This document shows positions 11,177-64,000 of a stretch of DNA of 64,000 nucleotides, piece after piece; the first letter of the stretch is position 1; every line of letters begins with the position of its first letter. Below the pieces are notes generated by a model that was given only the letters and a program-made list of their open reading frames with translations, was not told the origin of the DNA and made no database searches. The stretch is taken from positions 302,161 to 366,160 of the IMG/VR virus record IMGVR_UViG_3300012988_000001; one strand, written 5' to 3'. The translations under genes were made by a program, and so were the position numbers.

Positions 11177-11418
11177 AAACTATCTTAGCTATGATGTTAG
11201 TACTTTTCAGTACTCAAGTGTTTGCTACCGACTACGTAATGTGTAATAACCCAATGCATATGACTGTAGACAAATACAGTAGTGATGAATATGTATCATT
11301 CAGCATTAGTCGCGATGGTACTGAAATTGAATTACGTGATGGACAGGTTCGTGTTTATTCCCCGGCAATTCAATGTTACCATGAAGATAACACAAAGGCT
11401 GCTAAACATGACAAATGA
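11173..11418 (+). CDS. small secreted protein
   Basis: signal peptide; same two-Cys motif. Confidence 0.8.
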   Translation: MKTILAMMLVLFSTQVFATDYVMCNNPMHMTVDKYSSDEYVSFSISRDGTEIELRDGQVRVYSPAIQCYHEDNTKAAKHDK

Positions 11419-11725: not shown

Positions 11726-11726
11726 T

Positions 11727-12650
11727 ATGATTTCTAAAGAAACACTATATCGTTTTCTGGTAGCACTGGACAAACAGTACGGCAACAGTGTTGAGTACTT
11801 TATGGTAAATCCATACAATGAGATTCAGCATAAATTGGCTGAATTACAGAAACTACGGGATGAGCATGAAATGTGCGTGTGTTGGGATTTCCGTGCACCA
11901 CATGATATCGAATCCTATGACATTTCTGATATGTTTGACATTCGCGATCGCCTTGCAGTTGCACAATCCCCAGAATATCTACGTCTTGGAGTATACACTA
12001 ATAGTGCCGATCCACGCGTATCTTTAACTCCTGATTCTGAACTCTTCCAGAAGATGGCTAAGTTGTTTGTCGAAACCGATGATATTGTGGCATATATGCC
12101 GACTGACGTGATCGCAATCGATGATATGTCATTCACTGTACATGATATCCTTTGTGCAATCAACGAACACGCAGAACCGACACGTTTGAAGAAACACATT
12201 ATCGGTGATCGCTATGTTAAAGTGAATAGTGAAGATTTGACTATTGGTAGTACTGAATGCTATTCGGACGAAATGATTGATAAAATTGAAAAGGTAGCAG
12301 ATAAAGTACTTCCATATTGGAATGGTACTAAAGATTATACATATCCAGAAAGTGATGAATATGTAGGGTGGGAGGCAATCTTTGACGGTGAGAATCCTGT
12401 TCTAACCGACGACAACGTAATCTACTTATGTTGTAATAAACCAGACTATGATACTACTCGTGATAATATTCCAGCACTAACCAACTTGGTGGACTTCATG
12501 TGGGATACTGAAGATAAGTTCGTTGGTATTATGCTTATTCGTGCAATAACACAGGCGAAGATTAGTATTTCGTATAAAGATGTTCCCCGCTTTAAAGATT
12601 ACGTAAATGATAATGCTCTTTACGTTCGTGAAATTCGCTACATGCAATAA
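11727..12650 (+). CDS. hypothetical protein
   Basis: GGAG SD; long acidic ORF. Confidence 0.8.
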   Translation: MISKETLYRFLVALDKQYGNSVEYFMVNPYNEIQHKLAELQKLRDEHEMCVCWDFRAPHDIESYDISDMFDIRDRLAVAQSPEYLRLGVYTNSADPRVSLTPDSELFQKMAKLFVETDDIVAYMPTDVIAIDDMSFTVHDILCAINEHAEPTRLKKHIIGDRYVKVNSEDLTIGSTECYSDEMIDKIEKVADKVLPYWNGTKDYTYPESDEYVGWEAIFDGENPVLTDDNVIYLCCNKPDYDTTRDNIPALTNLVDFMWDTEDKFVGIMLIRAITQAKISISYKDVPRFKDYVNDNALYVREIRYMQ

Positions 12651-12694
12651 TCTTTATGGGGAAGTAATACTTCCCCTTTTCTTAAGGAAGAGTT

Positions 12695-13117
12695 ATGTCC
12701 CTTTTAAAAGTACTTAAACAAATAGATGAAGAATTTGATTCACTATATAGTCCAGTATCTCACCATAGAGTCCCTATTCCGAAAACAGTAATGGAAATAG
12801 TGTTCAATTGGGGATGGAGTGCAAGTGACAAGCCCTATAGTATTAGATTTGAATGGTTCCCTGCACAGGATAGATATTGTCTATTAATTGATGTGAATGG
12901 TTCAGATGAATTCATATACAATTCATGGGATTTAACTAATAAAGGACATACTTGGAATGAAGACTTTGCAATAGAATTTGATATAGAACGTGGATTCTTT
13001 GATTGCCTACCAATGGCATATCCAATGACAACCAATTTTAAGTACGAGCATATTGCAGTACTTAAGAGTATTTCTGACAAATACGCGGAGAAGAAAATTA
13101 TACACAACATGAAATGA
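12695..13117 (+). CDS. hypothetical protein
   Basis: AAGGA SD. Confidence 0.75.
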   Translation: MSLLKVLKQIDEEFDSLYSPVSHHRVPIPKTVMEIVFNWGWSASDKPYSIRFEWFPAQDRYCLLIDVNGSDEFIYNSWDLTNKGHTWNEDFAIEFDIERGFFDCLPMAYPMTTNFKYEHIAVLKSISDKYAEKKIIHNMK

Positions 13118-13129
13118 CAAGAGGTGAAT

Positions 13130-13378
13130 ATGAAATGTGACAAGGCCATAGAGAAAATGCGTCGGAATAAACGTAACTGGACTATTCCTAAGCTGAAAGT
13201 GATTGCTACACGTTGTGGTATGACTGTAGAATCAAATGGTTCAACACATCACGTATTCAGGGTAGAAGGTGTCAAAGAACACCTATCAATACCCTTTAAT
13301 GGTAAAGATATCCACCCGGATTATATTACCAAATTTTTACGTCTTATTGATAAGACAAAAACCGAAGGAGAACAGTAG
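13130..13378 (+). CDS. hicA: HicA-like mRNA interferase (dsRBD fold), no adjacent HicB
   Basis: WTIPKLKVIA..CGM.V..NGSTHHVFR....HLSIP...IHPDYITKFL.LI resembles HicA; GAGGTG SD. Confidence 0.7.
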   Translation: MKCDKAIEKMRRNKRNWTIPKLKVIATRCGMTVESNGSTHHVFRVEGVKEHLSIPFNGKDIHPDYITKFLRLIDKTKTEGEQ

Positions 13379-14637
13379 TGATTGCAGAGTATATGGCAAC
13401 CTTCAGTAGTATGATGAAGGAATATCCGTGGATGGTTGGTATCTATTCCCTATACGGGATGACAGTACTAACATATTGTTTAAAATTCATTCCCGGATTT
13501 TTTGGTTTTATTAAAGCTCAAAGTATTACAACACTAGAGCTAAACAACGCTGGCTGGAGTGGCAATGAAGCACACTTTCAAGCATTCATGGCGTGGTATC
13601 TAAAGAGTCCATATTCCAAATGGTCACGCTATCTTTCACTAGATGGAAAGTACTCTCGTTGGGATGATGACGAAGACGAAAGTCCAGATGGGAAGAAACG
13701 CAAAACATACGTAATTGGTGCTGGTTATGGTACACACTTCTTCTTCTATAAGAAGCGTCTATTCTGGTTCAGCAAAGGTTCACTACAAAGTACAGGTTCA
13801 GAAAAAGAGAAACAAAATATTGTTATTAAAACTCTCGGTCGTAACCAACAACCACTAATTGACTTAGTAGAAGATTTCGCTGTTAAACCAAAAGAAACTG
13901 ATCTAAACATCTTCTCATACAAAGAAGAATGGGATGTTATTTCGCGAGTTAACAAACGCCCACTATCATCTGTAATTCTACGTAAAGACATTAAAGATGC
14001 ATTAGTGAAAAATCTTGAGTACTTCTACTCTAATCGTGATTGGTATGTCAAACGTGGACTATCATATAAGCAAACTTATATTCTACACGGTCTACCGGGT
14101 ACAGGTAAAAGTAGTACAATTAAAGCACTAGCTTCACATTTCAACAAGAACATCTGCCTAATTGATATTACATCATTAGGAAATGCAGCGTTCGAGAAAG
14201 CAATGGCTTCAGTGCCTAAAAATAGTATTGTACTAATTGAAGACTTTGATTCATGTCGTGCTTTACATTCACGTGTAGAAGATGATAGTGATGATCCAGC
14301 ATCTAAGCTAGCAGAGCTAACCGAAGTGCTATCACTATCTAAAGTACTAAACGTACTAGATGGTGTAGTATCACTAGATGATACAGTTGTTTTCCTAACA
14401 ACCAACCATCTAGAGAAAATTGATGCAGCACTAATCCGTAAAGGTCGTGTTGATTACATTCACGAGATTCCATATCTTGAGGATGCAGAAGTAAAAGAGT
14501 ACATAAAGCTAATGTATCCAGAAGCTGAAGTACCACAAGTTACATTTGACACTATAGCAGGTTGTGATATTCAATCTAATTACCTAGAGCATCGCGAAGA
14601 TGTTAATGCATTCGTGGCAAGTCTAGCAGTCAAATAA
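13378..14637 (+). CDS. BCS1-like AAA+ ATPase with N-terminal membrane anchor
   Basis: TM segment, BCS1_N-like GxGxHFFFY region, Walker A GLPGTGKS, Walker B IEDFD, LNVLDG, TTNH..IDAALIRKGRVD. Confidence 0.85.
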   Translation: MIAEYMATFSSMMKEYPWMVGIYSLYGMTVLTYCLKFIPGFFGFIKAQSITTLELNNAGWSGNEAHFQAFMAWYLKSPYSKWSRYLSLDGKYSRWDDDEDESPDGKKRKTYVIGAGYGTHFFFYKKRLFWFSKGSLQSTGSEKEKQNIVIKTLGRNQQPLIDLVEDFAVKPKETDLNIFSYKEEWDVISRVNKRPLSSVILRKDIKDALVKNLEYFYSNRDWYVKRGLSYKQTYILHGLPGTGKSSTIKALASHFNKNICLIDITSLGNAAFEKAMASVPKNSIVLIEDFDSCRALHSRVEDDSDDPASKLAELTEVLSLSKVLNVLDGVVSLDDTVVFLTTNHLEKIDAALIRKGRVDYIHEIPYLEDAEVKEYIKLMYPEAEVPQVTFDTIAGCDIQSNYLEHREDVNAFVASLAVK

Positions 14638-14678
14638 TAGGTTGGCACAGAAATGTGCCATATTAATCGGAGGACATT

Positions 14679-15086
14679 ATGGCAGAAGTTAAACTTAAAC
14701 TAAAAGAGCGTTGGGTTGATATTAAGACCAACAAAGTAATTCAAAGTATTGTCACTGAAGAATCCATTCACATTGATGATGACCTAGATCAAGAAGCAAT
14801 GAAGCAATACTATCTTAAAGAACGTATTGGAAGTTCTGAACATGATGGGGTTCGTCATGAAGTATCAATTGTGGGAGAGGGTCTATCTAAGTCAGAGATG
14901 TTTGACTTCATTCTAAACAATGCAGTATCGATTGATCCTGATAACACTACGTGGACCAAATACCATGAAGATGGTACTGAAGAAAAGTTTAAAAAGAAAT
15001 ATACGGTATCTATCAATGGTCATGGTATGAGTGGGTTTGATCTAGAAGATGCAATCAATTACTATGTTCGGGAGATTCAGAAATGA
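14679..15086 (+). CDS. hypothetical protein
   Basis: GGAGG SD. Confidence 0.8.
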   Translation: MAEVKLKLKERWVDIKTNKVIQSIVTEESIHIDDDLDQEAMKQYYLKERIGSSEHDGVRHEVSIVGEGLSKSEMFDFILNNAVSIDPDNTTWTKYHEDGTEEKFKKKYTVSINGHGMSGFDLEDAINYYVREIQK

Positions 15087-15406
15087 TTCTAACAATGGCT
15101 ATTATTTGTATCACAATAGTTGTGTGTTTTATTATTCGGTACAGTGCAATTGTTCACTGTCAAAATATTGAGTACCGCATATATCAGGATTTACATAAAA
15201 AAGAGTTGGCCTCCTATGGTGTACGTCCTTATTTTTATAATGGTGGTGAGAAGCGTGAATCATTCTGGGGATATGTTGTCTATGATGAAATGAATGACTG
15301 TATCTATAAAGGTGCGGATAAAGATAACACCAATTTTATAATTTATCGCCGGGAAGGAGATGCAGAGATCTTTGCCGCAAAAGTGAGGAAAATGCATGGC
15401 CTCTAA
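15083..15406 (+). CDS. membrane-anchored hypothetical protein
   Basis: N-terminal hydrophobic helix. Confidence 0.75.
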   Translation: MILTMAIICITIVVCFIIRYSAIVHCQNIEYRIYQDLHKKELASYGVRPYFYNGGEKRESFWGYVVYDEMNDCIYKGADKDNTNFIIYRREGDAEIFAAKVRKMHGL

Positions 15407-15761
15407 AGAACACTATGATGTTTGTTATGCTTTACTAAAACGGTTTGTTACTCTTGTGCGTGACACTGGTAGCTTGCATGGTATGTCATGGTCATTTAGT
15501 CCACGTAAAGTCCAGATTGATGATATAATCAATCACACAGGTATAATCATACGCAAGGATAAGATCTATGTGCAAGCAAAAGGTCTTAGTCCACACGATA
15601 CGCTTGAGCGGGTTTTCAGTGCGAGTGCATCTTTTCAGAAGTCGTGCAGTACTGAATACTTCTGTGATAAGGCTATGGAAGATTTAATTGTTGAGGTGTT
15701 CAAAGCACACCACGATTACATTAGTGATAGTCTATTAGTCGGTTATTGGGAAGAAATATAA
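15396..15761 (+). CDS. hypothetical protein
   Basis: coupled ORF, GAGG SD. Confidence 0.75.
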   Translation: MASKEHYDVCYALLKRFVTLVRDTGSLHGMSWSFSPRKVQIDDIINHTGIIIRKDKIYVQAKGLSPHDTLERVFSASASFQKSCSTEYFCDKAMEDLIVEVFKAHHDYISDSLLVGYWEEI

Positions 15762-16195
15762 TGGCTATTATCAAACATGCGAGTTGGAGCAAAAGTATGG
15801 AATACACCAACAAGCAGAAGATTAAAGAGAGAACCTTAGAGCATATAGTCCAAGCTATTATAGAGTTGGAAGAGAATAAAACAAGAACCTACTCATGCGA
15901 TCTACAAGATGAACGCTTTATAGTTTCCAAATCTTTGTATAGTTCATCCTTTAAAGTTGTCGTGACCATTGATTCAATGACAATCTACTGGATGAGTGAT
16001 CGAGTAGATATGAAACGTGCTAAGTGCGAGGAAGAACTTTTCCAGATGATGTGCTTAGATGATACGTACTGCGACGAAGAGTTCGAGGAAGGTATCAAAT
16101 TATTAGTAGAACTACATATCCAACGCATACTCAAACAGAGCGGTATTGGAGGATTCAAAGAAGGTGTTTATGACAATCAGCCAAACTGTGAATAG
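15761..16195 (+). CDS. hypothetical protein, EExFQ-like
   Basis: CEEELFQMM. Confidence 0.75.
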   Translation: MAIIKHASWSKSMEYTNKQKIKERTLEHIVQAIIELEENKTRTYSCDLQDERFIVSKSLYSSSFKVVVTIDSMTIYWMSDRVDMKRAKCEEELFQMMCLDDTYCDEEFEEGIKLLVELHIQRILKQSGIGGFKEGVYDNQPNCE

Positions 16196-16496
16196 TTATG
16201 TTGCTGGCCTTACCTCGTTTAAACAAGGTAAGGGTTATATGATTGGCGATATTACATACAGTGTGAATTTCGATCCATCATCATATAATGAAGTACTATT
16301 ATTCTGGACAGAAGAAGAAGGACAGAAGTCAATTCAATTTGCTTGTACTGACTTTGGCATCTATATTCGTGAAGAAGGTGTAGAACAACCAACGCAATAT
16401 TTTTATCACACACTTATGTACACAATGGATTTTGGATTCAATCTAAAAGACCTTGCAAATGTGCATTACATTTTCAAAGAAATGAAAAATTCCTGA
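16170..16496 (+). CDS. hypothetical protein
   Basis: AAGG SD. Confidence 0.7.
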   Translation: MTISQTVNSYVAGLTSFKQGKGYMIGDITYSVNFDPSSYNEVLLFWTEEEGQKSIQFACTDFGIYIREEGVEQPTQYFYHTLMYTMDFGFNLKDLANVHYIFKEMKNS

Positions 16497-16523
16497 GACA
16501 AAACGTGACTCGTGTCCTATAAT
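16495..16523 (+). promoter_or_regulatory. class II promoter
   Basis: GAGACA-N12-TGTCC-TATAAT. Confidence 0.7.
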
Positions 16524-16553
16524 ATAAGAGTCAATAATATGGAGAAATAAAAT

Positions 16554-17462
16554 ATGTTTACCAAATTCCACAACGTAAGTTTTATCGCATCAACTGTAAC
16601 TGGTCTAGAACTAGAAAACAATATCATTCACATCCTAACCACTGGTCAGGGTTATGAAGTTCGCTTTGCAACCAAAAGCGAAGCTGAAGCTGGCCTTGTA
16701 GAGCTAACCGACCTACTAAACGCTGCTGTTGGCACTACCAAAACCGCACAGGAAGCACCCAAAGCGTCCAAAGCAGACGAGCTAAAGGCTACCATCACTT
16801 CTGGTTTTGACCGCCTACAGAGCGTCCTAGAAGGTGCTAAGACCACGGCAACCGACAAAGTACAGGAAGCTATCATGGCTCAAGTGCTAGGTACTGCTGG
16901 TAAGACCGTATCTGACCTAATGAATCGCAAAGATGATCTATTGCAACGTGCAGCAGATATGCTATCATCTCTTGAGACTCTTTTAGATACAGAAGAAGTT
17001 AAAGACGAACCTAAACCAATGGCTACTCGCAATAAACCAGCCCCTGAAGAGAAAGTTACCATCAAAGATGCAGCAGAAGCAGTTAAACGTGCTACCAGCA
17101 TCCTAGACACTGACGGTATCTTTAGCGGTGCTAAAGAAATGCCAGAGTTCACCGCAGAAGTTAAAGCTACTCGTGATACCAAAAAGATCACGGCTGAAGA
17201 ATTCAAACAAATCTTCGGTACTGAAGCAGAACCTGTAATTGGTGACTTGAGCGAACGTCAAGTACGTGAATTCATTGCCGAGTTTGTAGATGGTGCACTA
17301 GCCAATGAACGTGTACAACAGCTATTCCAAAACATCAAAGATAATTTTGGGGTAGATGAAGCTGAAGGGGCGATTGATGGCTATAAGAATCTAATTCTAA
17401 CCATCTGTCTACAAAATACCGAGATGACTCTATCACAAATCATTGCTCGTTATTTCTCCTAA
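16554..17462 (+). CDS. helical Ala/Glu/Lys-rich hypothetical protein
   Basis: GGAG SD; strongly biased codons. Confidence 0.85.
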   Translation: MFTKFHNVSFIASTVTGLELENNIIHILTTGQGYEVRFATKSEAEAGLVELTDLLNAAVGTTKTAQEAPKASKADELKATITSGFDRLQSVLEGAKTTATDKVQEAIMAQVLGTAGKTVSDLMNRKDDLLQRAADMLSSLETLLDTEEVKDEPKPMATRNKPAPEEKVTIKDAAEAVKRATSILDTDGIFSGAKEMPEFTAEVKATRDTKKITAEEFKQIFGTEAEPVIGDLSERQVREFIAEFVDGALANERVQQLFQNIKDNFGVDEAEGAIDGYKNLILTICLQNTEMTLSQIIARYFS

Positions 17463-17472
17463 TACAGAAATA

Positions 17473-17503
17473 AAAAAAAGGCGGCCTTACGGTCGCCTTT
17501 TTG
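17473..17503. terminator. bidirectional terminator
   Basis: A8-GGCGGCC ttac GGTCGCC-T5 between convergent genes. Confidence 0.85.
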
Positions 17504-17505
17504 TG

Positions 17506-18645
17506 TTATACTTTTCCAGTTACAACAATAGTACCAGCGAAGTTATCTTCACTGTGAAGAATAATTTCTTCATCACTTTCTAGATCAGCTTCTACTGTAC
17601 TCACATTATTACCTGCATAAACAGTGAATGAAATGTTTTGCTTACCATGAGTAGATTGTGGTATACTTGACACATACGAATCACCAGAAGCGGTCCACGT
17701 TAGTGCTTGTGTAAACGGTGTGGTTTCTAATGTAGTACCGATTAGTATTAAGTAGAATGGACTATTATCTTCTTTCTGTACTGTAACAGTACCATTAACT
17801 ACTGATACATCAGCAAAGAATACTTCACGTGATGCATTGGCAGTCTGTAACTGTACTACTAAATCATTACCACGGCGGTGGACTGATTCAGGAACAACAG
17901 ATTGATAAACACCACCAACATTAGTTTGGTCTGCACTTGCAATATAAAGTTCAGTAACATAATCCGAGTCTTCCCCTGCTGGTACAATAGGAATTACTAC
18001 CTCTTTATCATTATAATTCGGAGATGTAATATCTATTACAATATTTCCCGGACCAGTAATACCACCCGGAATATCTATTTCAAATGAACCATCAGGATTT
18101 ACAGTACCTTCGACTTCAGTTCCATCTGGTAGGGTTGCTTTAATAACCATACCATTTGTATTAACTGTTCCACCCGGAACAACGATATTACCTGTAATTT
18201 TGGTATCACCATCTTGAATTGGATCAACCACAACATTAGAAATGTCAATTGGTGGAATACCACATTCAGGAGTATAGATATCGAATAGTACTTTACCATT
18301 ACTTAAAATTTTCTTGTTAAGTAACCAACGTACTACGAATCCTTGAATTGTATTACTTGGGTTGTATCCTCTCATGAAGAAAGTATTACGCGGAATGTTG
18401 TTAACTAATTGTTCATCCGATAGAGAATAATCTAACGGGTAGCCCATTAAGTCAACACCAGTTAGTAGTAGCTTTTGTGTTACTTTCATAGTACTTGGAT
18501 CAATCAAGTCAAACATTACATCACTACGTTGTTTGTAGATTCTTAAGTTTGTCGTTGTTGTTTGGTCATGAAAATGAACACCGTTGGCAATAAAGCCACA
18601 TACACCATAAGGATAATCATTTATCCCTGCTATTGGTCTTGCCAT
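17506..18645 (-). CDS. putative virion structural protein with Ig-like domain
   Basis: VDPIQDGDTKITG...ATLPDGT..GTVNPDGSFEIDIP resembles bacterial Ig-like repeats; late-type promoter upstream. Confidence 0.65.
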   Translation of the reverse strand: MARPIAGINDYPYGVCGFIANGVHFHDQTTTTNLRIYKQRSDVMFDLIDPSTMKVTQKLLLTGVDLMGYPLDYSLSDEQLVNNIPRNTFFMRGYNPSNTIQGFVVRWLLNKKILSNGKVLFDIYTPECGIPPIDISNVVVDPIQDGDTKITGNIVVPGGTVNTNGMVIKATLPDGTEVEGTVNPDGSFEIDIPGGITGPGNIVIDITSPNYNDKEVVIPIVPAGEDSDYVTELYIASADQTNVGGVYQSVVPESVHRRGNDLVVQLQTANASREVFFADVSVVNGTVTVQKEDNSPFYLILIGTTLETTPFTQALTWTASGDSYVSSIPQSTHGKQNISFTVYAGNNVSTVEADLESDEEIILHSEDNFAGTIVVTGKV

Positions 18646-18674
18646 TTTTCCCCCTTGTTTTTATTAGCGTTACC

Positions 18675-18684
18675 CATATTTACC
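18675..18684 (-). promoter_or_regulatory. putative late promoter GGTAAATATG
   Basis: identical 10-mer ~30 nt upstream of both - strand units (here and 60185). Confidence 0.55.
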
Positions 18685-18697
18685 TGAAATTTATGAT

Positions 18698-18726
18698 TTG
18701 ACACCGGACATGAAAACCAGTATAAT
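18698..18726 (+). promoter_or_regulatory. consensus sigma70 promoter
   Basis: TTGACA-N17-TATAAT. Confidence 0.85.
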
Positions 18727-18826
18727 GTTTGCATCTTATGGAGTGGTGTAGCAGAGAATTTTGATTGACACCTACCATTTTTGGCTGTATTATAAGGCTG
18801 TATTATTATAAGACTGGAGAATGTAA

Positions 18827-19399
18827 ATGAATCGCTTAACTATTAAGAATGACAAGATGACTGTGAAATTATTCAGTGACGAGGCTGATTCGTTCATGGC
18901 TAAGGCCATTGCGAAATCTGAAAAGTACGAAAAAATCGCATCATCTTCAAAATCACCGTATGGCTTCAACCACCCACATGCACACTTTGTTGGTATGGTT
19001 GCTGAACATGCGGCATGGGTACTCTTCAATGAAATCGAAGAACTCACCAACAAAGAGCTATCAATTGATCCCGCTTATCAGTTCGAAAACCGTGATGCAG
19101 AATGTGATCTAATAGTGAATGGTTTGCGGATTGAAGTCAAAGGTATCAAGTACGGTAGCTGGTTACAGTTCGGTCCGTGCATCAGTACTCGCCAGTTGAA
19201 AAAGATTGAGAAAAAGGCTGACATTGTATTGTGGGCGTTGTATAATGAACGCCGTCAGGAATTTTCTTTCGAAGGTTTCAACTACGTTAAAGATATCCGT
19301 GCTCTACCTACCATGATTACAGGTGCTGTAGGTCGTCCACAGATTGAAAACTATCCAGTAATGGATATCATTAAACCACTTCAGGAGCTAGCTCTATGA
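18827..19399 (+). CDS. PD-(D/E)XK restriction-endonuclease-fold protein
   Basis: GMVAEHA...CDLIVNGLRIEVK. Confidence 0.65.
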   Translation: MNRLTIKNDKMTVKLFSDEADSFMAKAIAKSEKYEKIASSSKSPYGFNHPHAHFVGMVAEHAAWVLFNEIEELTNKELSIDPAYQFENRDAECDLIVNGLRIEVKGIKYGSWLQFGPCISTRQLKKIEKKADIVLWALYNERRQEFSFEGFNYVKDIRALPTMITGAVGRPQIENYPVMDIIKPLQELAL

Positions 19400-19641
19400 A
19401 AACAATTATTCAAGAAGGTACTACTGCCAATGTTATCTACACCTTAAATGGTGATGATGAAAACATGGTTGAAGTTAACTTTCCAGTACTACCAAAAGTT
19501 GGTGATGTAGTTTCTCTAAGCCGTCATGGTGGCTACTTCAGTTCTAAACATGTGATTACTAAAGTCGAACATGAAGTACGTGTTGGTGATCTTGGTAACA
19601 CCGTTACAATCAATCTCTATACTGTACCGGAGGAAGTATGA
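19396..19641 (+). CDS. hypothetical protein
   Basis: coupled; LPKVGDVV motif. Confidence 0.75.
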   Translation: MKTIIQEGTTANVIYTLNGDDENMVEVNFPVLPKVGDVVSLSRHGGYFSSKHVITKVEHEVRVGDLGNTVTINLYTVPEEV

Positions 19642-20102
19642 GTTTATTCTGGATTCTATTCCCAACGATTGTATTCTTTGTAGTACTCTCGTGGACTGAT
19701 CTACAAAGCCATGTTGGGTATGCCGTTTGTATCTCTAAGTACGAAGGGTGGTGGAAGTTCCCATTGATTTGGTTACAATCATTCTTCATTCCATCTTGCT
19801 TCTTACGTAGTGGAAGGAGTAATATAGATTTTGATATTGTTGCCAACGTTGAACGTGCTTGTCGCATTGCACTAAGTGATGATCCTAAGATTACATTATC
19901 GTTTGATAAACGGCGTGATATCTATGAAATCAATGGATCTCGTAATTTGTATTTCCGGTTCAAAGATAATGACAGTGTTGATGTAAACGGTTATGACAAG
20001 TTAATACCACCACGTGTTGCATTCCTCATGTTGGCAGTACGGGACAAGATCAATGCAAAAGTCAAGGCTGAGGATTTAAAACCAAAGTCACTTATTAGTT
20101 GA
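19638..20102 (+). CDS. membrane-anchored hypothetical protein
   Basis: GGAGG SD; hydrophobic N-terminus. Confidence 0.75.
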   Translation: MSLFWILFPTIVFFVVLSWTDLQSHVGYAVCISKYEGWWKFPLIWLQSFFIPSCFLRSGRSNIDFDIVANVERACRIALSDDPKITLSFDKRRDIYEINGSRNLYFRFKDNDSVDVNGYDKLIPPRVAFLMLAVRDKINAKVKAEDLKPKSLIS

Positions 20103-58528: not shown

Positions 58529-59446
58529 TTATGTTAACTTAAATGCTTGTGTTGTCGTTGCACCAGAATTATTCTTTCCACCCATAGTGAGTATAAAATT
58601 ATTCGCACTATTCGCGAATATATTACAGTTCACCAAATAACTAGGAACCGTACCCATAGACTCAATAGAAGAATTACCCGGAACATATGTGTACATATTA
58701 CCAGTACTATAACCAAACAATACAACAATGTCTTTATATGCAGCTATACGCCCTATAGCCTCTGTAGTGCTCAATATGACTCGCCACGTCCCAGACACCG
58801 TATTATACCCCATTAGGTATAACGTGCTCCCTGTGCCTCCCATAACCAATAATTCAGTACCAACCAACACCATGCTCGTTCCCAATGCCATAGGATATGG
58901 GGAAGTGGCTAATGTCGTCCACGTTGAAGTACTGATATCAAATACTGACGCTGTGTTAGCCGCCGCTAATGTACTATAAGAACCAAACAACCACAACTTA
59001 TTATCATAACATACCATAGAAGCATGTAATCTGGCTGCTGGTTTCGTCCCTAAAGTATTAACTAAACTCCACGCATTAGTACTGACATTATATACATATA
59101 AATCGTTCTGCATACTTCCACCCGCTGGTAATGATGTACTACCACCAAATGAATATACTCTGTTATTAACATCATCAAATGCCATTGCTGGTGCACTTCG
59201 GTTTGAACCAAATTGTGCTAGCTGTGTCCAGTTATTAGTACTAGGATTATATCTCCAAAAGTCTCGGTAATATGTATTGGTCAGTACTCCACCCATAGCA
59301 TATATCTCTCCTGTACTCGCCGCACAAAAACCCATCTCCGCTCTTGTACTCATTGCACTGTAAGTCTGTGCTTCGTAATTTCCTAAGAATGAATTTTGTG
59401 GTATAATCACATTCCCGTACTTTACTATCCTCGCAAAAGGTATCAT
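58529..59446 (-). CDS. MIPFARI-family protein, Kelch-repeat beta-propeller
   Basis: IYAMGG..WRYNP..NNW, VYSFGG..YNV..NAW, LLVMGG. Confidence 0.85.
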   Translation of the reverse strand: MIPFARIVKYGNVIIPQNSFLGNYEAQTYSAMSTRAEMGFCAASTGEIYAMGGVLTNTYYRDFWRYNPSTNNWTQLAQFGSNRSAPAMAFDDVNNRVYSFGGSTSLPAGGSMQNDLYVYNVSTNAWSLVNTLGTKPAARLHASMVCYDNKLWLFGSYSTLAAANTASVFDISTSTWTTLATSPYPMALGTSMVLVGTELLVMGGTGSTLYLMGYNTVSGTWRVILSTTEAIGRIAAYKDIVVLFGYSTGNMYTYVPGNSSIESMGTVPSYLVNCNIFANSANNFILTMGGKNNSGATTTQAFKLT

Positions 59447-60156
59447 GAATAAATCTCCTGTACTGTGAATCCGGTAACCGGATACTTCATACCAGCCCGC
59501 ATCCGGTATCTCTCAACTATAGCACTATTTGTAGGAGTACTGTTATATACATCACCACATAAAGTGAAAGCAGCCAACGATCCACCAGTACTTAATACAT
59601 CGTACTGTGCAGTAGGTACACCATCTATATACAAATAATGTCGGTTTATTGACGAATCATACATAAAACAATAATGATGCCACACTGGAGTATTCCATGG
59701 AATTGCAGTGTAATTGTAATATTGAACGTTATTACCTAATTTAAATGTCGCAGAACTACCACTATAATCATTTAATAATTGATATTTGGGAGTACTAGCC
59801 CACGGACCGCTAAATGTATTTAAACAATTAATTGCACCAAAAAATGTATATCCTGATATCAATGTCCGGTGCCAAAAATCTAAAGTATATGATGATGTAA
59901 CCCATTGAACCGGAAAACCATTTTTACCTATAATACTCTTCTTTACTTGTACCCCTGAACCATATGGCATATCAGTTCCAATACTGATAGTAGCTGAACC
60001 AGCAGCACCATTTATATCCTGTACAGTTATCGTATTACCTACATAATCAGTAAACTCTGTACTAGAAAATATAGTACTATCCCATGCCAATAATGATCCA
60101 CTGTACCATGGCAACACAGTGTTCCCGTACTTACTTATTCTCGCAAATGGTATCAT
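59443..60156 (-). CDS. MIPFARI-family protein, LamG/ConA-like domain
   Basis: YTLDFW...WHHYC...LYIDG...ERYRMRAG. Confidence 0.85.
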   Translation of the reverse strand: MIPFARISKYGNTVLPWYSGSLLAWDSTIFSSTEFTDYVGNTITVQDINGAAGSATISIGTDMPYGSGVQVKKSIIGKNGFPVQWVTSSYTLDFWHRTLISGYTFFGAINCLNTFSGPWASTPKYQLLNDYSGSSATFKLGNNVQYYNYTAIPWNTPVWHHYCFMYDSSINRHYLYIDGVPTAQYDVLSTGGSLAAFTLCGDVYNSTPTNSAIVERYRMRAGMKYPVTGFTVQEIYS

Positions 60157-60274: not shown

Positions 60275-61288
60275 ATGAATAAACCAAAAAATACACCATT
60301 CTATACCAAATTCATCGCACAAGTATACTCTCACATCATAACCTCCGACGACAATACCGTAGTTATGAATCTCGACAACAATACAATTCTCTCCGTGAAC
60401 TTCAATTCACCTACGTATAAAACACTAAACAATACATTCGTAATGACTAACCCTCCTGTACTACATATCAGTAATACAGAATATAACCTATACGTAAAAG
60501 TAGATACCGAAACCCTTACCGTATCTCTCAGAGACTACAAAACCGATGACCTAATCTATGATGTATCTTTCAACGAAATTAATGCCGTCCAACTACAGTC
60601 AGATGTTAAACAAAGCAAAAAACCATTCATCGACTCAGTGGCTATCGCGTACCAAATCCTTAAGTACATCCCATATGTCACACCAGCATATAACAACGGT
60701 AAAGATAAAATCTTTAATACCGCTAAAGAACTTAAAGCCCATGTAGCAGAATGCATCAATCGTACTATCTTACACTTCAATAATCGCGAACAAGAAATTA
60801 TCCTCAGTACAGAAAAAGATATGCAGGAAATCACCGGAGTAATTGATTACCTCAATAATCTCAGTACTCAAAGCGTTAAAGAAACTAATAGCCTAGAACT
60901 ACAAGTCAAAGCAACAGTCAATGACACCACCTATATCATTAATATCAACGACAAACTCTCAATAGATATTATAGATAAAGAAGATGCAAATATTACCTAC
61001 AAACTACAGTACGACCCAGATAACTCTTCTGTACTACAAGTAATAAACAAAAACTTTAATAACACTATTCATACCATCCCTACATTCATTCTACAGAATA
61101 ACAAAATGGATGAGGAAGAAATTAAAGCACTACGTAGTACATACAAACTATTCGATGCCACTTGTCAAGGTTATCGAATTTTACAACACTTCCATAACTC
61201 TGGTACGTTCTCTATTACAGATAAAGCATATGATATCAAACAACAAGTCTATTCAGCACTAGGGTATACTCCATTTATCCTCAAATAA
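60275..61288 (+). CDS. hypothetical protein (Asn/Thr-rich, G-poor coding strand)
   Basis: AAGGAG SD, 337 aa. Confidence 0.8.
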   Translation: MNKPKNTPFYTKFIAQVYSHIITSDDNTVVMNLDNNTILSVNFNSPTYKTLNNTFVMTNPPVLHISNTEYNLYVKVDTETLTVSLRDYKTDDLIYDVSFNEINAVQLQSDVKQSKKPFIDSVAIAYQILKYIPYVTPAYNNGKDKIFNTAKELKAHVAECINRTILHFNNREQEIILSTEKDMQEITGVIDYLNNLSTQSVKETNSLELQVKATVNDTTYIININDKLSIDIIDKEDANITYKLQYDPDNSSVLQVINKNFNNTIHTIPTFILQNNKMDEEEIKALRSTYKLFDATCQGYRILQHFHNSGTFSITDKAYDIKQQVYSALGYTPFILK

Positions 61289-61495
61289 GTATACGCCAGA
61301 ACGCATAGGAAGCCCGTAGGCAAGACTTCTCTTACACCCTGTACAGGTGTCGCTCCTGTAGATTGCGTCCAGTAGACGCTTATCGAAAGGATTCAACACC
61401 TGTAAAAATACCCAACTGTTGTGTTGTACAGTACTTTTCTTTTTATAATTATACAGGGAATCGTTTCATATGCAACTATTCTCCTGTACTCATGT

Positions 61496-61531
61496 GAGCT
61501 ACGGTAAGCTACGGTAAGCTACGGTAAGCTA
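61496..61531 (+). repeat. 10-bp tandem repeat (AGCTACGGTA) x ~3.5
   Basis: GAGCTACGGTAAGCTACGGTAAGCTACGGTAAGCTAC. Confidence 0.9.
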
Positions 61532-62143
61532 CTGTGAAGTACTCCTTCTGTACTTTACCCCCTTCCGCTATATCTTCTCTTAAAGAGAAGTATAAAGTAC
61601 TGAAAAGTACTTGTACCTTGTTTTGTAAAAGCCCTTTCACCTTTCAGGGAAAGTACCATCGACCCTTGAGCTAAAATCTGGAAAGTACTCCATCCTAAAT
61701 CTCGATCCTAGAAATTTTGGAGTACCTTCCAACCTTCAGCCCAATGTTGGAGTACTGACCAAATCATTAACCGATGCACCAAAAGTACTTGACACGTTTG
61801 TTAGACTATGGTAACATGCCATTAGTGGGAATCCACCCTGCGTGTACGTGTATGTATATAATACCAGTACTGGATAAATTAACAGTAAATTTAATGAAAA
61901 TAATGATTGACATGCTGGTGGGTTTTAGGCATAATAGTTGCCATAGAGTCATGGTTTTCCTTCCATAACTTTTCGTTGAATATAAACAGTACGGCTTACC
62001 CTGCAAGTATTCAGTACTGATATTAAGCTAAGAGGAAGTTCACCACCTATCACCTACCAGACTTCCAATCTGGGAAATGATAAAAAATGTAAGAATAATA
62101 AGAAGGGAGAATCCCCACTGAGAAATACAGTCTATTGAGATTA

Positions 62144-62195
62144 TCAGTACTACAATAGTTACTCCACAAGAATGAGAAGACTATTGTAGTACTGA
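62144..62195. repeat. perfect 16-bp inverted repeat, 20-nt spacer
   Basis: TCAGTACTACAATAGT / ACTATTGTAGTACTGA. Confidence 0.9.
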
Positions 62196-62311
62196 CACTT
62201 TTATGGTAAGATTTGTTGGATGGATTTTGGGTATACTTGTCCTGTACTCTGGACGGATTTTGGGCGTAGTTGTGCTAGTTGCGTTTATACGAATGATAAG
62301 CGTTCTCCTTT

Positions 62312-62413
62312 TGAGAATGGTTCTCGTTTGCATTTGCGAATGAGATTGATTCTCATTTGCTGGTGGAAATGATAATGATTCGCATTAGCCCCTGAGAATG
62401 ATAATGACTATCA
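62312..62413. promoter_or_regulatory. four Fur-box-like 7-1-7 palindromes at 29-bp period
   Basis: boxes start at 62312, 62341, 62370, 62399; best copy TGATAAT-G-ACTATCA. Confidence 0.6.
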
Positions 62414-62509
62414 TTTGCAGTACTGGCCTGTTTTTGCCATTGCCTAGCCTACCGCGACGGAATATATTATTCCGGCAGTATCTCAATTCATCTTTTTTTG
62501 TTCACGGCT

Positions 62510-62593
62510 ATTATCTCAATATATGGGGGAAGTGTCAAGCGTTTATTTTACTAAAAATAGTAGTTGACAGGGTAGCCAGTACTGATATATAAT
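62510..62593. promoter_or_regulatory. divergent sigma70 promoters
   Basis: + strand TTGACA(62564)-N18-TATAAT; - strand TTGACA(62538)-N17-GATAAT. Confidence 0.65.
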
Positions 62594-62618
62594 AATCACA
62601 ACAAAGAGAAATTTGTAG

Positions 62619-62705
62619 CCCACAGGGTGCGGGGGTCTGTCCTTAATTTTTTAAATGCGAATGATTATCATTTCGCTCATATGATACATTTCCGCACCCT
62701 GTGGG
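62619..62705 (+). ncRNA. long hairpin enclosing a fifth Fur-like box
   Basis: perfect 14-bp CCCACAGGGTGCGG/CCGCACCCTGTGGG; TGCGAAT-G-ATTATCA at 62656-62670. Confidence 0.5.
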
Positions 62706-62844
62706 TTCGGGAGTTTCGCCTCCATGTAAAACATTATACGGGTTTCCTGTGCTTGAGTCAACATCTTTTTAAAAGAAAATCGAAAATAATTCCGGTTGTT
62801 TTATCCCTCCAGTACTGGCATACTTAAAGCCTACTATATAAGGA

Positions 62845-63150
62845 ATGAAAACAATGTATCATTTAACATTAGAAAAGCATTTATCTAGCATTTTGGAAAA
62901 GGGTTTAATCCCTGCTATTGGATCGCGTAGTCGGGCGTTTGGTGAAAAAGTGGCGGCGGTATACTTGTTTAAGCACGTTGACGATGCATACGACGCTTTA
63001 GCTAATTGGTACGGGGATGCAGTAGGGGATCAATCTGTTGTACTGTTAGAAGTTGATAGCCAGCGTTTTAGTACTGTAAACGTTGCGTTTGAATATCAGT
63101 GTTTAGAAGTAATAAAAAGTACTGAAATAAAAGTTTTAGAATATCTTTAA
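62845..63150 (+). CDS. putative ADP-ribosyltransferase-fold protein (Tpt1/KptA-like)
   Basis: YHLT....SILEKGLIP....R....VYL....V.LL.V...FEY. Confidence 0.55.
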   Translation: MKTMYHLTLEKHLSSILEKGLIPAIGSRSRAFGEKVAAVYLFKHVDDAYDALANWYGDAVGDQSVVLLEVDSQRFSTVNVAFEYQCLEVIKSTEIKVLEYL

Positions 63151-63229
63151 AAAGTACTTGCATTGTTTTTTCATTCTGTCATAATAGCTCTATCGAAACG
63201 AGATACACAAACACATTAAGGAAAGTATT

Positions 63230-63472
63230 ATGTTACGCATTGTTAAAATGACTCCATCAGTAGGTAAAGCAATTGTTTATGCAGTTGTAGTATCCGAAGA
63301 TAATGCCAACCATTTACACGATTTACTGAGTCGCTTCTTTGAGCGTGAAGGATATCAATTCTTTACTATCTCATATGTTGAACGTTTTGTTTGCCCTTGT
63401 GTGGATATTTCAGAATACAAAGTAACGGCCTTTATGAATGCCGACGAAATGATCTCAAACGGTACTTTGTAA
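63230..63472 (+). CDS. hypothetical early protein
   Basis: sigma70 promoter, AAACACATTAAGGAA leader. Confidence 0.75.
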   Translation: MLRIVKMTPSVGKAIVYAVVVSEDNANHLHDLLSRFFEREGYQFFTISYVERFVCPCVDISEYKVTAFMNADEMISNGTL

Positions 63473-63554
63473 GTTAGTATTAAAAGTACTTGCAAAGTAT
63501 AAGCGAGTACTTTATAATACTTACATACAAACGAAACACATTAAGGAAAGAATC

Positions 63555-64000
63555 ATGGAAAACATCATCGACGTTATCAAAGCAGTATCTTATGACGCAC
63601 TGAATGAAGCACAGAAAGCACAGGCAATTGAGATTATGAGAGATTTAGAAAATCATGACTCTACTCCGTTTTGGTCACAATGCATTCTGGAAGATTGGAA
63701 AGAGCATTTAGAATCAAACTATGGCATCAGTGAAGCCGTGATCTACTGGTCTGGTTTTAGCTCACAGGGCGACGGTGCAAGCATTAGCACAGAGTACTAT
63801 ATTGATATTGAGAAGTTTTTACGCAAATGTAAAGCGTGGTCAAAATTCCGTGTCTTACATAACATTGTAGACCGTGAAGAGATTCACGCAAAGGTTAACC
63901 GTAGCTCAAGCCGTTACAGTCACGAAAACACTGTAGGCGGCAGTGTAGAACTTGATTATAACATTGATTGGACTCCTACCCAAGAAGCGAACGCCGAACG
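63555..64000 (+). CDS. hypothetical protein with YWSGFxSQGDGAS motif (partial, runs off window)
   Basis: open to window end; TTGCAA..TATAAT promoter and shared leader. Confidence 0.75.
   Translation, partial: MENIIDVIKAVSYDALNEAQKAQAIEIMRDLENHDSTPFWSQCILEDWKEHLESNYGISEAVIYWSGFSSQGDGASISTEYYIDIEKFLRKCKAWSKFRVLHNIVDREEIHAKVNRSSSRYSHENTVGGSVELDYNIDWTPTQEANAE

What the first reader, a model, noticed from the sequence alone, without database searches (positions are those of the whole stretch)
62312..62413. Four Fur-box-like operators at exact 29-bp periodicity
Seen: TGAGAAT-G-GTTCTCG (62312), TGAGATT-G-ATTCTCA (62341), TGATAAT-G-ATTCGCA (62370), TGATAAT-G-ACTATCA (62399), plus a fifth at 62656. 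Established: the Fur 7-1-7 consensus is TGATAAT-n-ATTATCA. A leftward sigma70 promoter at 62538 points into the array. Inference: the phage senses host iron status through Fur, titrates Fur as a decoy (which would derepress iron-uptake receptors), or uses these as iterons for its own protein.
Basis: partly seen in the sequence, partly recalled or inferred. Interest (0 to 1): 0.72.

Follow-up and report, generated by a model that had tools for sequence, protein, structure and literature searches.

The report
Fur-box array in phage terminal repeat
A giant phage carries a tight row of sites that look exactly like docking sites for the host's iron regulator Fur near the edge of its long terminal repeat. 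The same kind of row sits in phage T5's unexplained "injection stop signal", so a host protein may act at the genome ends of several unrelated virulent phages.

Summary
Palindromes start at 62312, 62341, 62370 and 62399, exactly 29 bp apart. There is also an overlapping box at 62393, a weak one at 62294 and a fifth at 62656.

- **Match to Fur sites.** Their scores on a matrix built from 11 E. coli Fur promoters equal or beat genuine Fur sites. A pattern derived from the phage boxes finds the Fur regulon in E. coli K-12.
- **Location.** The window is the end of a 366-kb RaK2-like jumbo phage. The array lies in a 1.5-kb non-coding leader, 721-848 bp inside a direct terminal repeat of about 20.8 kb. 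The repeat boundary is at 61571.
- **Restriction to the repeat.** All six good matches in the genome lie in this repeat.
- **Other phages.** The same box type occurs in the terminal repeats of Alcyoneusvirus and Munch-like phages, in phAPEC8, and in T5's injection-stop-signal region (direct repeat C, palindromes E-I). I found no paper that calls the T5 boxes Fur boxes.
- **No phage candidate.** The phage has no Fur gene, no T5 A1/A2 homologue and no gene shared with the other families next to the array. A host factor is therefore the economical reading.

The array overlaps no strong promoter, so it is not a classical operator. Its function is inferred and binding is untested.

The parts
61571..61580 (.). 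Left boundary of the long direct terminal repeat, which is also the physical left end (TATCTTCTCT)
   Evidence: It is homologous to position 1 of fENko-Kae01, whose DTR 1-19736 was set by PhageTerm, and to position 1 of Serratia BF. In run X6 a contig starts exactly at 61571 with depth 13.4, against 3.3-8.6 on the left.
61789..61817 (+). Rightward sigma70-like promoter (TTGACA, 17 nt, TAACAT, TG extension)
   Evidence: 10 of 12
61907..61935 (+). Rightward sigma70-like promoter (TTGACA, 17 nt, CATAAT); it reads toward the array
   Evidence: 11 of 12
62144..62195 (.). Perfect 16-bp inverted repeat (TCAGTACTACAATAGT / ACTATTGTAGTACTGA) with a 20-nt loop, followed by TTTT
   Evidence: pair I12; the role as a terminator of the rightward transcript is inferred
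62217..62276 (+). Two 27-nt direct repeats (TGGAYGGATTTTGGG...) immediately left of the array
   Evidence: family D9. The core weakly resembles T5 direct repeat D (CGGATTTGCACA); homology is inconclusive.
62294..62308 (.). Weak Fur-like box 0 (TGATAAGCGTTCTCC, 3 mismatches)
   Evidence: the overlapping 19-mer at 62289 scores 13.1 bits
62312..62326 (.). Fur-like box 1 (TGAGAATGGTTCTCG)
   Evidence: 12.1 bits. It is near-identical to the E. coli fecI site TGAGAATGGTTATCA.
62341..62355 (.). Fur-like box 2 (TGAGATTGATTCTCA)
   Evidence: 13.9 bits. The identical 15-mer occurs in T5 (9614), SpoonbillGilly and, with one change, phAPEC8.
62370..62384 (.). Fur-like box 3 (TGATAATGATTCGCA)
   Evidence: 18.6 bits. 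The identical 15-mer occurs in SpoonbillGilly and phAPEC8.
62393..62413 (.). Fur-like boxes 4a and 4 overlapping with a 6-bp offset (TGAGAATGATAATGACTATCA), the classical two-dimer arrangement
   Evidence: (17.7 and 19.2 bits)
62510..62538 (-). Leftward sigma70-like promoter that reads through the array (TTGACA, 17 nt, GATAAT, TG extension)
   Evidence: 11 of 12; conserved in fENko-Kae01
62564..62593 (+). Rightward consensus promoter (TTGACA, 18 nt, TATAAT, 12 of 12) that starts the promoter-hairpin-box module
62619..62705 (+). Inverted repeat CCCACAGGGTGCGG / CCGCACCCTGTGGG (14 bp, perfect) enclosing Fur-like box 5
   Evidence: pair I23. It is conserved in Kae01, PHA46, BF, Muenster and KP13-7, and has a second copy in the own genome at about 6030-6190 on the minus strand.
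62656..62670 (.). Fur-like box 5 (TGCGAATGATTATCA), about +56 to +70 of the rightward start site
   Evidence: 14.6 bits; identical in fENko-Kae01 and PHA46
62733..62761 (-). Leftward promoter-like site converging on the hairpin module (TTGACT, 17 nt, TATAAT)
   Evidence: 11 of 12

Best explanation
The palindromes are a cluster of binding sites for the host's ferric uptake regulator Fur. There are six or seven in the array, plus one in each of two promoter-hairpin modules.

The cluster lies in the non-coding leader of the phage's ~20.8-kb direct terminal repeat, 721-848 bp from the repeat boundary, which is also the physical left end. Host Fe2+-Fur dimers are present before any phage protein is made, and are predicted to coat about 125 bp of the incoming DNA.

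The array overlaps no strong promoter. It sits between convergent early sigma70 promoters: about +90 to +209 of the leftward one at 62538, and about 190-310 bp upstream of the consensus rightward one at 62564. The Fur coat therefore most likely acts as a boundary element. It would block read-through transcription toward the repeat edge, keep H-NS-type silencing off the first early promoters, or both. Events at the genome end would then depend on host Fur and iron state.

It is the jumbo-phage counterpart of the 'direct repeat C / palindromes E-I' block in T5's injection-stop-signal region.

**Shown:** motif identity with Fur sites, clustering, restriction to the terminal repeat, position, and cross-family occurrence.
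**Inferred:** that Fur binds, and what binding does.
For: **1. Match to genuine Fur sites.** The matrix was built from 11 E. coli K-12 Fur promoters. Leave-one-out scores of those sites are 9.5-18.7 bits (median 13.4). The array has 7 hits of 12 bits or more and 3 of 16 or more (19.2, 18.6, 17.7). In 50.5 kb of non-training E. coli DNA there are 2 hits of 12 or more and none of 16 or more.

**2. The phage pattern finds the Fur regulon.** TGAKAATNATTMTCA with up to 1 mismatch gives 26 sites in E. coli K-12, against 2 for the reversed control. Nine lie just upstream of entC/fepB, fiu, ryhB, fecI, sodA, sufA, mntH, fhuF and gpmA.

**3. Six-bp offset pairs.** Hit pairs at 62336/62342, 62365/62371 and 62394/62400 are offset by 6 bp. 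Footprinted E. coli Fur sites show the same offset (PMC2189734).

**4. Restriction to terminal repeats.**
- Own genome: 6 of 6 matches.
- T5: 6 of 6.
- SpoonbillGilly: 5 of 6 within the first 10 kb of the record (its repeat was not mapped here) and the sixth 90 nt from the record's other end.
- fENko-Kae01: 8 of 11.
- Muenster: 6 of 9.

**5. Three unrelated families carry the same box type in non-coding end regions.** These are RaK2-like jumbo phages, T5-like phages and phAPEC8-like phages. The consensus of 40 boxes is AAATGAKAATSATTMTCATTT. No protein-coding gene is shared around the arrays, and T5 A1/A2 have no match in this genome.

**6. No phage Fur.** No Fur-family gene was found, while the same search found the family in all 14 control genomes.

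**7. Precedent for distal arrays.** Several Fur sites upstream of ftnA keep H-NS off the promoter (PMC3788343).

**8. Repeat boundary and position.**
Against: - There are no binding data of any kind. The one structure-prediction job was not folded.
- The array is not in operator position.
- Serratia BF and related Erwinia phages carry different palindromes at the homologous place (matrix maximum 2.6 bits), and CBB has no boxes above the control level. Fur docking is therefore dispensable or replaceable there.
- Phage boxes prefer G at half-site position 4 (TGAGAAT, 25 against 14), where the Fur consensus has T.
- Particular off-consensus boxes (TGAGATTGATTCTCA, TGATAATGATTCGCA) are shared across families. 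This points to a horizontally moving module, or to a more specific and still unknown binder.
- The box at genome position 190 lies inside a coding region and may be coincidental.
- The host of this metagenomic phage is unknown.
Confidence: 0.5

Rival explanations
1. Fur, or whatever binds the boxes, builds an architectural nucleoprotein plug used for a DNA transaction at the genome end. This could be a T5-type injection stop with two-step DNA transfer, or host-factor-assisted recognition of the repeat edge by terminase, as IHF assists at lambda cosB. It would not be transcription control.
For: - The T5 array (9468-9640) lies inside the annotated injection stop signal. It sits next to the DnaA-box inverted repeats and just left of the 7.9% nick and shear point.
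- Topology is the same in both families. The array lies 0.45-0.85 kb inside a long terminal repeat, counted from one boundary, in a large non-coding repeat-rich stretch.
- There are 4-8 phased boxes, more than simple repression needs.
- The injection stop needs no phage protein synthesis (paper text), so it requires a pre-existing factor.
- In viral contigs L033, L035 and L059 the boxes sit between DnaA-box triplets beside the terminase genes.
Against: - The window region has no DnaA boxes, and the jumbo phage has no A1/A2 homologues.
- Nothing is known about DNA entry or packaging direction in RaK2-like phages.
- Other boxes lie deep inside the repeat (genome 6090, Kae01 7308, Muenster 10914), far from any end.
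- From my own knowledge, published E. coli host-factor screens for T5 report fhuA and not fur.
Confidence: 0.2
2. The boxes are bound by a phage-encoded or virion-carried protein, or by another host protein, whose specificity merely resembles Fur's. The array would then be a set of iterons for an origin, a partition site or a packaging site.
For: - Phased arrays of palindromes are typical of iterons and centromere-like sites (own knowledge: F sopC, plasmid iterons).
- Off-consensus box variants and the G preference are shared across families.
- BF replaces the array with different palindromes, as a co-evolving protein-site pair would.
- DnaA boxes accompany the boxes in T5-likes and in L033-type contigs, which looks like an origin.
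Against: - No shared gene lies near the arrays in the three families, over 24 kb of this genome's repeat region, the whole T5 left repeat, and 1.5-2.5 kb of flank each side in phAPEC8 and SpoonbillGilly.
- Neighbouring ORFs have no Rep-like or DNA-binding family match.
- Boxes are palindromic rather than directional, and the 29-bp spacing is 2.76 helical turns.
- T5 origins were mapped near the genome centre (paper text).
- The match to Fur sites is as good as that of genuine sites.
Confidence: 0.18
3. Fur decoy. Replicating phage DNA titrates Fur and derepresses host iron uptake, to feed iron-dependent phage enzymes such as ribonucleotide reductase. Each genome would offer about 8 or more sites per repeat in two repeats, multiplied by hundreds of copies.
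For: - Site quality is high and the sites are multiple.
- From my own knowledge, a single Fur box on a multicopy plasmid is enough for the Fur titration assay. The number of sites late in infection would be comparable to the cellular Fur pool.
Against: - T5 carries the same array but destroys host DNA within minutes, so derepressing host genes cannot be its purpose there.
- A decoy need not be confined to the terminal repeat, and need not sit at a conserved distance from its edge.
- The effect would come late in infection.
Confidence: 0.07
4. The palindromes act as hairpins in the leftward transcript or in single-stranded DNA, with no sequence-specific protein. Alternatively, they are a neutral product of tandem duplication.
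For: - A leftward promoter transcribes the array and a terminator-like site follows at 62116-62104.
- BF has other palindromes at the same place.
- The 29-bp unit looks duplicated.
Against: - Half-site differences are not compensatory. TGATAAT/ATTCGCA gives two mismatches as a stem, and TGAGATT/ATTCTCA gives one (read).
- Rfam has no match.
- A hairpin function does not explain why the sequence is the Fur consensus in three phage families.
Confidence: 0.05

Closest known systems
Phage T5 injection-stop-signal region: direct repeat C copies 1-4 and palindromes E-I (AY587007 9468-9640)
   Same: - The box type is the same (AAATGAGAATCATTATCATT), and TGAGATTGATTCTCA is identical in both.
- Both arrays lie in a large non-coding, repeat-rich stretch 0.5-0.85 kb inside a long direct terminal repeat.
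- In both genomes all good matches are confined to the terminal repeats.
- The T5 element is conserved in 525 phage records.
   Different: - T5 has DnaA-box inverted repeats, a strand nick and nine direct repeat D copies beside the array, and A1/A2 genes in the repeat. The jumbo phage has no DnaA boxes and no A1/A2 match.
- T5 spacing is 35 bp or irregular, not 29.
- Neither the T5 annotation nor the Davison preprint calls these boxes Fur boxes.
E. coli Fur-binding site clusters (Fur boxes: the 19-bp GATAATGATAATCATTATC or 7-1-7 model), including the distal multi-site array upstream of ftnA
   Same: - Consensus, matrix score range and 6-bp overlapping pairs all agree.
- A distal multi-site array that does not overlap the promoter has a precedent at ftnA, where it acts as an H-NS antirepressor.
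   Different: - The array is on a virulent phage genome, phased at 29 bp over about 125 bp, between convergent promoters.
- G is preferred at half-site position 4.
- No iron-related gene is nearby.
phAPEC8 (Stephanstirmvirinae) non-coding array, NC_020079 142,937-143,050
   Same: - It has four boxes at exactly 29-bp spacing.
- It shares the variants TGATAATGATTCGCA and TGAGATTGATTCT(C/T)A.
- It is followed by a GC-rich element ending ...CCATGTAA, like the right arm of the window's hairpin module.
   Different: - It belongs to an unrelated 148-kb myovirus.
- Its position relative to the physical ends is unknown.
- The order of box variants is permuted.
Fur box at the stx1 promoter of Shiga-toxin prophages (own knowledge, not checked here)
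   Same: A phage-borne Fur site that ties phage gene expression to host iron.
   Different: It is a single operator overlapping one promoter of a temperate phage's cargo gene. It is not a phased array at the genome end of a virulent phage.
Host-factor sites in phage end processing (IHF site I1 within lambda cosB) and centromere-like palindrome arrays (F sopC); own knowledge
   Same: Cis-acting arrays near a genome end or in a segregation site that assemble a higher-order complex, in the lambda case with a host protein.
   Different: The proteins and sequences differ. No terminase or partition link is shown here.

Membership tests
Fur-binding site cluster (enterobacterial Fur box) | Sequence match to the 19-bp / 7-1-7 consensus at the level of validated sites | tested here: met
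   Array scores are 12.0-19.2 bits, against 9.5-18.7 for leave-one-out E. coli sites. No hit of 16 bits or more occurs in 50.5 kb of control E. coli DNA.
Fur-binding site cluster (enterobacterial Fur box) | Overlapping sites offset by 6 bp (two dimers on opposite faces) | tested here: met
   Hit pairs at 62336/62342, 62365/62371 and 62394/62400; the rule comes from PMC2189734.
Fur-binding site cluster (enterobacterial Fur box) | The motif defined by the candidate sites recovers the known Fur regulon | tested here: met
   26 sites against 2 for the control in E. coli K-12. Nine lie upstream of entC/fepB, fiu, ryhB, fecI, sodA, sufA, mntH, fhuF and gpmA. The test is partly circular, because the pattern includes the canonical T/A option.
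Fur-binding site cluster (enterobacterial Fur box) | Operator position overlapping the -35/-10 of the regulated promoter | tested here: not met
   The array lies about +90 to +209 of the leftward start site and 190-310 bp upstream of the rightward one. Only weak 9-of-12 promoter-like hits fall inside it. Distal arrays do exist, as at ftnA.
Fur-binding site cluster (enterobacterial Fur box) | Metal-dependent binding by Fur protein | not testable with these tools
   The complex-prediction job with FUR_ECOLI and the DNA was not folded.
T5-type injection-stop-signal (iss) region | Direct repeat C / palindrome E-I type boxes | tested here: met
   blastn link to the T5-like phage SpoonbillGilly; identical 15-mers.
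T5-type injection-stop-signal (iss) region | Location in a large non-coding stretch just inside one boundary of a long direct terminal repeat | tested here: met
   The boundary is at 61571 and the array at +721 to +848. In T5 the array is at 9468-9640 of a 10,139-bp repeat.
T5-type injection-stop-signal (iss) region | Paired DnaA boxes (IRD'/IRC') next to the boxes | tested here: not met
   No TTWTNCACA match in window 61200-63000.
T5-type injection-stop-signal (iss) region | Direct repeat D type repeats (TGCAAATCCGACA) between the array and the repeat boundary | tested here: inconclusive
   Two 27-nt repeats with a GGATTTTGGG core lie at 62217-62276 (D9). They share only about 7 nt with direct repeat D.
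T5-type injection-stop-signal (iss) region | A1 and A2 genes in the repeat | tested here: not met
   No match at E of 1 or below in the own genome. This was a sequence-level search only.
T5-type injection-stop-signal (iss) region | Two-step DNA transfer that stops at the element | not testable with these tools
   This needs a blender/shear or time-resolved entry assay.
Replication-origin iterons | Directional repeats with an adjacent initiator gene, DnaA boxes or an unwinding element | tested here: not met
   The boxes are palindromic. There are no DnaA boxes. Flanking ORFs have no Rep-like family match. The cumulative GC skew minimum near the repeat start also coincides with a change in gene strand.

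The most novel reading that the evidence does not exclude
The Fur-box array is the missing host-dependent part of T5-type injection control. On this reading, pre-existing Fe2+-Fur coats the array as the terminal repeat enters and halts or gates further DNA transfer or end processing. RaK2-like jumbo phages and phAPEC8-like phages would use the same trick. Two-step, host-state-gated genome delivery would then be a widespread strategy of large virulent enterobacterial phages rather than a T5 peculiarity.
Probability: 0.13. Interest if true: 0.9.

Novelty: new variant of a known kind. Interest (0 to 1): 0.68.

Why it matters
**An open problem becomes testable.** T5's injection stop signal has been an open problem for about 60 years. 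Its repeats are described as impossible to interpret, and the only host factor proposed so far is DnaA. If the palindromes there are first-rate Fur sites, the question can be tested directly with fur-deleted or iron-chelated hosts, scrambled boxes and Fur ChIP.

**A wider pattern.** The same boxes occur, confined to terminal repeats, in jumbo phages and phAPEC8-like phages. This suggests a general way in which large virulent phages use an abundant host regulator on the first DNA that enters the cell.

**Practical relevance.** Infection by therapeutic jumbo and T5-like phages could depend on the iron status of the target bacterium.

Tried and rejected
- **Complex prediction** (FUR_ECOLI x2 plus 30 bp of the array): not folded, so it is no evidence either way.
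- **Rfam** scan of 61200-63300 at E of 1 or below: only chance-level eukaryotic miRNA/snoRNA hits.
- **Plasmid database:** no match to the array.
- **Fur family (PF01475):** no match in the own genome.
- **T5 A1 and A2:** no match in the own genome, and an empty result shows little because no positive control exists for these two queries.
- **All-against-all blastp** of ORFs around the arrays of the three families: the only hit is an artefact ORF reading through the array itself.
- **DnaA boxes** in the window region: none.
- **The idea that 29 bp is a general, functionally fixed spacing: rejected.** Relatives differ, and a sample of 80 viral contigs shows 18-48 bp with no peak.
- **Covariation in the hairpin that holds box 5:** the stem is invariant, so there is no evidence for or against an RNA structure.
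- **GC skew:** monotonic and tracks gene strand, so it says nothing about an origin.
- **Read laying:** only assembler contigs were available, so there are no read-end pile-ups. The contig break and depth step at 61571 were still useful.
- **Other regulators considered from memory and rejected.** KdgR (AAATGAAACAnTGTTTCATTT) shares only the outer six bases on each side. The ArgR, Zur, MetR and LacI-family operators differ in spacing or core sequence.
- **Literature:** the open full-text library holds no paper that joins 'Fur box' with T5-like, Tequintavirus, jumbo phage or RaK2. The Davison preprint contains neither 'Fur' nor 'iron'. Subscription papers were not searched.
Full report
**What is there.** Window 62285-62420 holds a row of 15-bp palindromes of the form TGAnAAT-N-ATTnTCA. 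There is also an overlapping box at 62393, offset 6 bp from the last, and a weak one at 62294. A fifth good box at 62656 lies inside a perfect 14-bp inverted repeat, 62619-62632 / 62692-62705. The repeat unit is longer than the palindrome: 49-nt copies are 73-76% identical, which fits tandem duplication of a 29-bp unit. The whole stretch 61288-62845 has no convincing ORF.

**Where it is.** The window is the last 64 kb of a 366,160-bp IMG/VR virus record. Its nearest relatives, at about 80% nucleotide identity, are the jumbo myophages Salmonella Munch, 7t3 and PHA46 and Klebsiella fENko-Kae01. More distant relatives are Alcyoneusvirus (RaK2, K64-1, Muenster), Eneladusvirus (Serratia BF, Erwinia pEa_SNUABM) and Mimasvirus (CBB, GAP32).

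In fENko-Kae01 and Muenster, PhageTerm defined direct terminal repeats of 19,736 and 20,030 bp that start at position 1. The start sequence TATCTTCTC of Kae01 and BF aligns with window 61571. In public run X6, an assembler contig begins exactly at 61571 with depth 13.4, against 3.3-8.6 for the contigs to the left. Homology to the end of the Kae01 repeat stops at own-genome position about 18,508. The repeat is therefore about 20.8 kb (inferred), and the array lies 721-848 bp inside its left boundary.

**Is it Fur-like?** I built a position weight matrix from the best site in each of 11 E. coli K-12 promoters known to be Fur-regulated (fepA-fes, fepD-entS, fepB-entC, fhuA, fecI, cirA, fiu, ryhB, tonB, exbB, fur).
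- Leave-one-out scores of these sites are 9.5-18.7 bits, median 13.4.
- The array has seven 19-mers of 12 bits or more and three of 16 or more (19.2, 18.6, 17.7).
- In 50.5 kb of non-training E. coli DNA there are two hits of 12 or more and none of 16 or more.
- Forty Markov-1 simulations of the genome never gave more than 3 hits of 12 or more within 150 bp. The observed number is 7.

In the reverse direction, I searched E. coli K-12 with the pattern read off the phage boxes, TGAKAATNATTMTCA, allowing one mismatch. It finds 26 sites, against 2 for the reversed control. Nine lie immediately upstream of entC/fepB, fiu, ryhB, fecI, sodA, sufA, mntH, fhuF and gpmA. The fecI site (TGAGAATGGTTATCA) is nearly box 1. 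This test is partly circular, because the pattern contains the canonical option. It does show that the G-containing half-site TGAGAAT occurs in genuine sites. Matrix hits come in pairs offset by 6 bp, the arrangement reported for all footprinted E. coli Fur sites (PMC2189734).

**Distribution inside phage genomes.**
- In the own genome, all six matches with up to one mismatch lie in the terminal repeat: three in the array, one at 62656, one at genome 190 and one at genome 6090. None lies in the other ~345 kb.
- The match at 190 is inside a coding region and may be coincidental.
- The match at 6090 belongs to a second copy of a module. The module consists of a sigma70 promoter, GCCCACAGGGTGCGG, a box, CCGCACCCTGTGGG, then ATGTAA..ATTATAC and a T-run. 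Its first copy is window 62564-62775. It is conserved in Kae01, PHA46, BF, Muenster and KP13-7. The stem never varies, so an RNA structure is neither supported nor excluded.
- Matches in relatives are also concentrated in the repeats: fENko-Kae01 8 of 11, Muenster 6 of 9, PHA46 4 of 5 near the homologous place, KP13-7 6 of 8.
- Serratia BF has unrelated palindromes (TCTAGAC, TAGATGG) where the array should be, and only the hairpin box remains. CBB has no boxes above control level.

**The link to T5.** A blastn hit led to the T5-like phage SpoonbillGilly, and from there to T5 itself. T5 positions 9468-9640 are annotated as direct repeat C copies 1-4 and palindromes E-I. They consist of the same boxes, for example AAATGAGAATCATTATCATT and TGAGATTGATTCTCA, with matrix scores up to 18.3 bits.

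This block lies inside the annotated injection stop signal. It directly follows the DnaA-box inverted repeats and sits just left of the 7.9% nick, 500-670 bp from the inner end of the 10,139-bp left terminal repeat. All T5 pattern matches are in the terminal repeats. The block is conserved in 525 phage records.

The Davison preprint on T5 two-step injection lists these repeats, says their function cannot be guessed, proposes DnaA and a restriction-like A1, and contains neither 'Fur' nor 'iron'. I found no paper in the open full-text library that links Fur boxes with T5-like or jumbo phages.

A third family, phAPEC8-like myoviruses, has four boxes at exactly 29-bp spacing with the same off-consensus variants. 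They include contigs where two boxes sit between triplets of DnaA boxes, in the gap between terminase and replication genes. Spacing in that sample is broad, 18-48 bp, so 29 bp is a lineage feature and not a rule.

**Who binds?**
- The phage encodes no Fur-family protein.
- It has no detectable T5 A1 or A2.
- ORFs around the arrays of the three families share nothing.
- The flanking genes have no informative family matches. To the left are Kelch and LamG-type virion-like proteins; to the right are small proteins of unknown function.

A factor common to unrelated phages of Enterobacterales, and present before phage gene expression, is most simply the host's Fur. I put Fur binding at about 0.7. 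The main doubts are the G preference at half-site position 4, the sharing of particular imperfect boxes across families, and the replacement of the array in BF.

**What it does.** The array is not a classical operator. It lies between convergent promoters, rightward at 61789 and 61907 and leftward at 62538. It is also upstream of the 12-of-12 rightward promoter at 62564, which opens the row of small early genes.

My best reading is a Fur-coated boundary element. It would block transcription running toward the repeat edge, or act as an antirepressor barrier of the ftnA type against H-NS. Either way it makes the first events on the incoming DNA depend on host Fur and iron. This is inference.

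The main rival is an architectural role in DNA entry or end processing, as the T5 context suggests. Own-protein iterons, a Fur decoy and pure hairpins are less likely, for the reasons given under rivals.

**Novelty.** Fur-site clusters and the T5 repeats are both known objects. What appears new is recognising the T5 repeats as Fur-type sites, finding them confined to the terminal repeats of jumbo phages, and finding them across three phage families. I rate this a new variant of a known kind, interest 0.68. The claim rests on sequence evidence only.

Noticed in passing
Whole genome; e.g. window 61400-63600: AGTACT occurs 910 times in 366 kb, against about 120 expected from base composition. The next most frequent palindromic hexamer occurs 227 times. 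AGTACT is spread over the whole genome and is densest in the terminal repeat. It is also visibly dense in the leaders of Kae01, Muenster and BF. Some copies are the upstream part of early promoters (AAAAGTACTTGCA), but most are not. Its function is unknown.
   Followed up: partly
window 61497-61532: A tandem repeat (AGCTACGGTA) x3.6 lies 39 bp outside the terminal-repeat boundary. It is one unit shorter in three other public runs, so it is polymorphic.
   Followed up: partly
window 62564-62775 (+) and own genome about 6030-6190 (-; L004 1420-1650): A conserved module occurs twice in this genome and in five relatives from three genera. It consists of a strong sigma70 promoter, GCCCACAGGGTGCGG, a Fur-like box, CCGCACCCTGTGGG, ATGTAA..ATTATAC and a T-run. 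It may be a small RNA gene or a protein-bound inverted repeat. The stem is invariant, so covariation is uninformative.
   Followed up: partly
L022 1465-1605 (phAPEC8, NC_020079 142,921-143,061): An unrelated 148-kb myovirus has four Fur-like boxes at exactly 29-bp spacing. They share the imperfect variants seen in the window and are followed by a GC-rich element ending CCATGTAA. This suggests a horizontally moving module.
   Followed up: partly
L033 1050-1240 (also L035, L059): In these viral contigs two Fur-like boxes 29 bp apart are flanked on each side by three DnaA boxes. They sit in the gap between leftward terminase genes and the rightward thymidylate synthase and primase-helicase genes.
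   Followed up: partly
L008 600-830 (Serratia phage BF): At the place homologous to the array, BF has a different set of palindromes: a GTCTAAACGTCTAGA / TCTAGACGTTTAGAC inverted repeat and TAGATGG repeats. The Fur matrix maximum there is 2.6 bits.
   Followed up: no
L020 233-247 (T5) and SpoonbillGilly record 110-124: T5-like phages also carry a perfect or near-perfect Fur 7-1-7 box 110-250 bp from the left physical end. In T5 it lies inside the 3' part of dmp.
   Followed up: no
window 60054-60136: In three of the four runs laid (X1, X2, X6), contigs replace 81 nt here with 96 other letters. The site is in the 5' part of the minus-strand LamG-domain ORF 59443-60156, so this putative virion or adhesin gene varies between strains.
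   Followed up: no
window 62144-62195: A perfect 16-bp inverted repeat built around two AGTACT sites has a 20-nt loop and is followed by TTTT. It may terminate the rightward transcript from the promoter at 61907.
   Followed up: no
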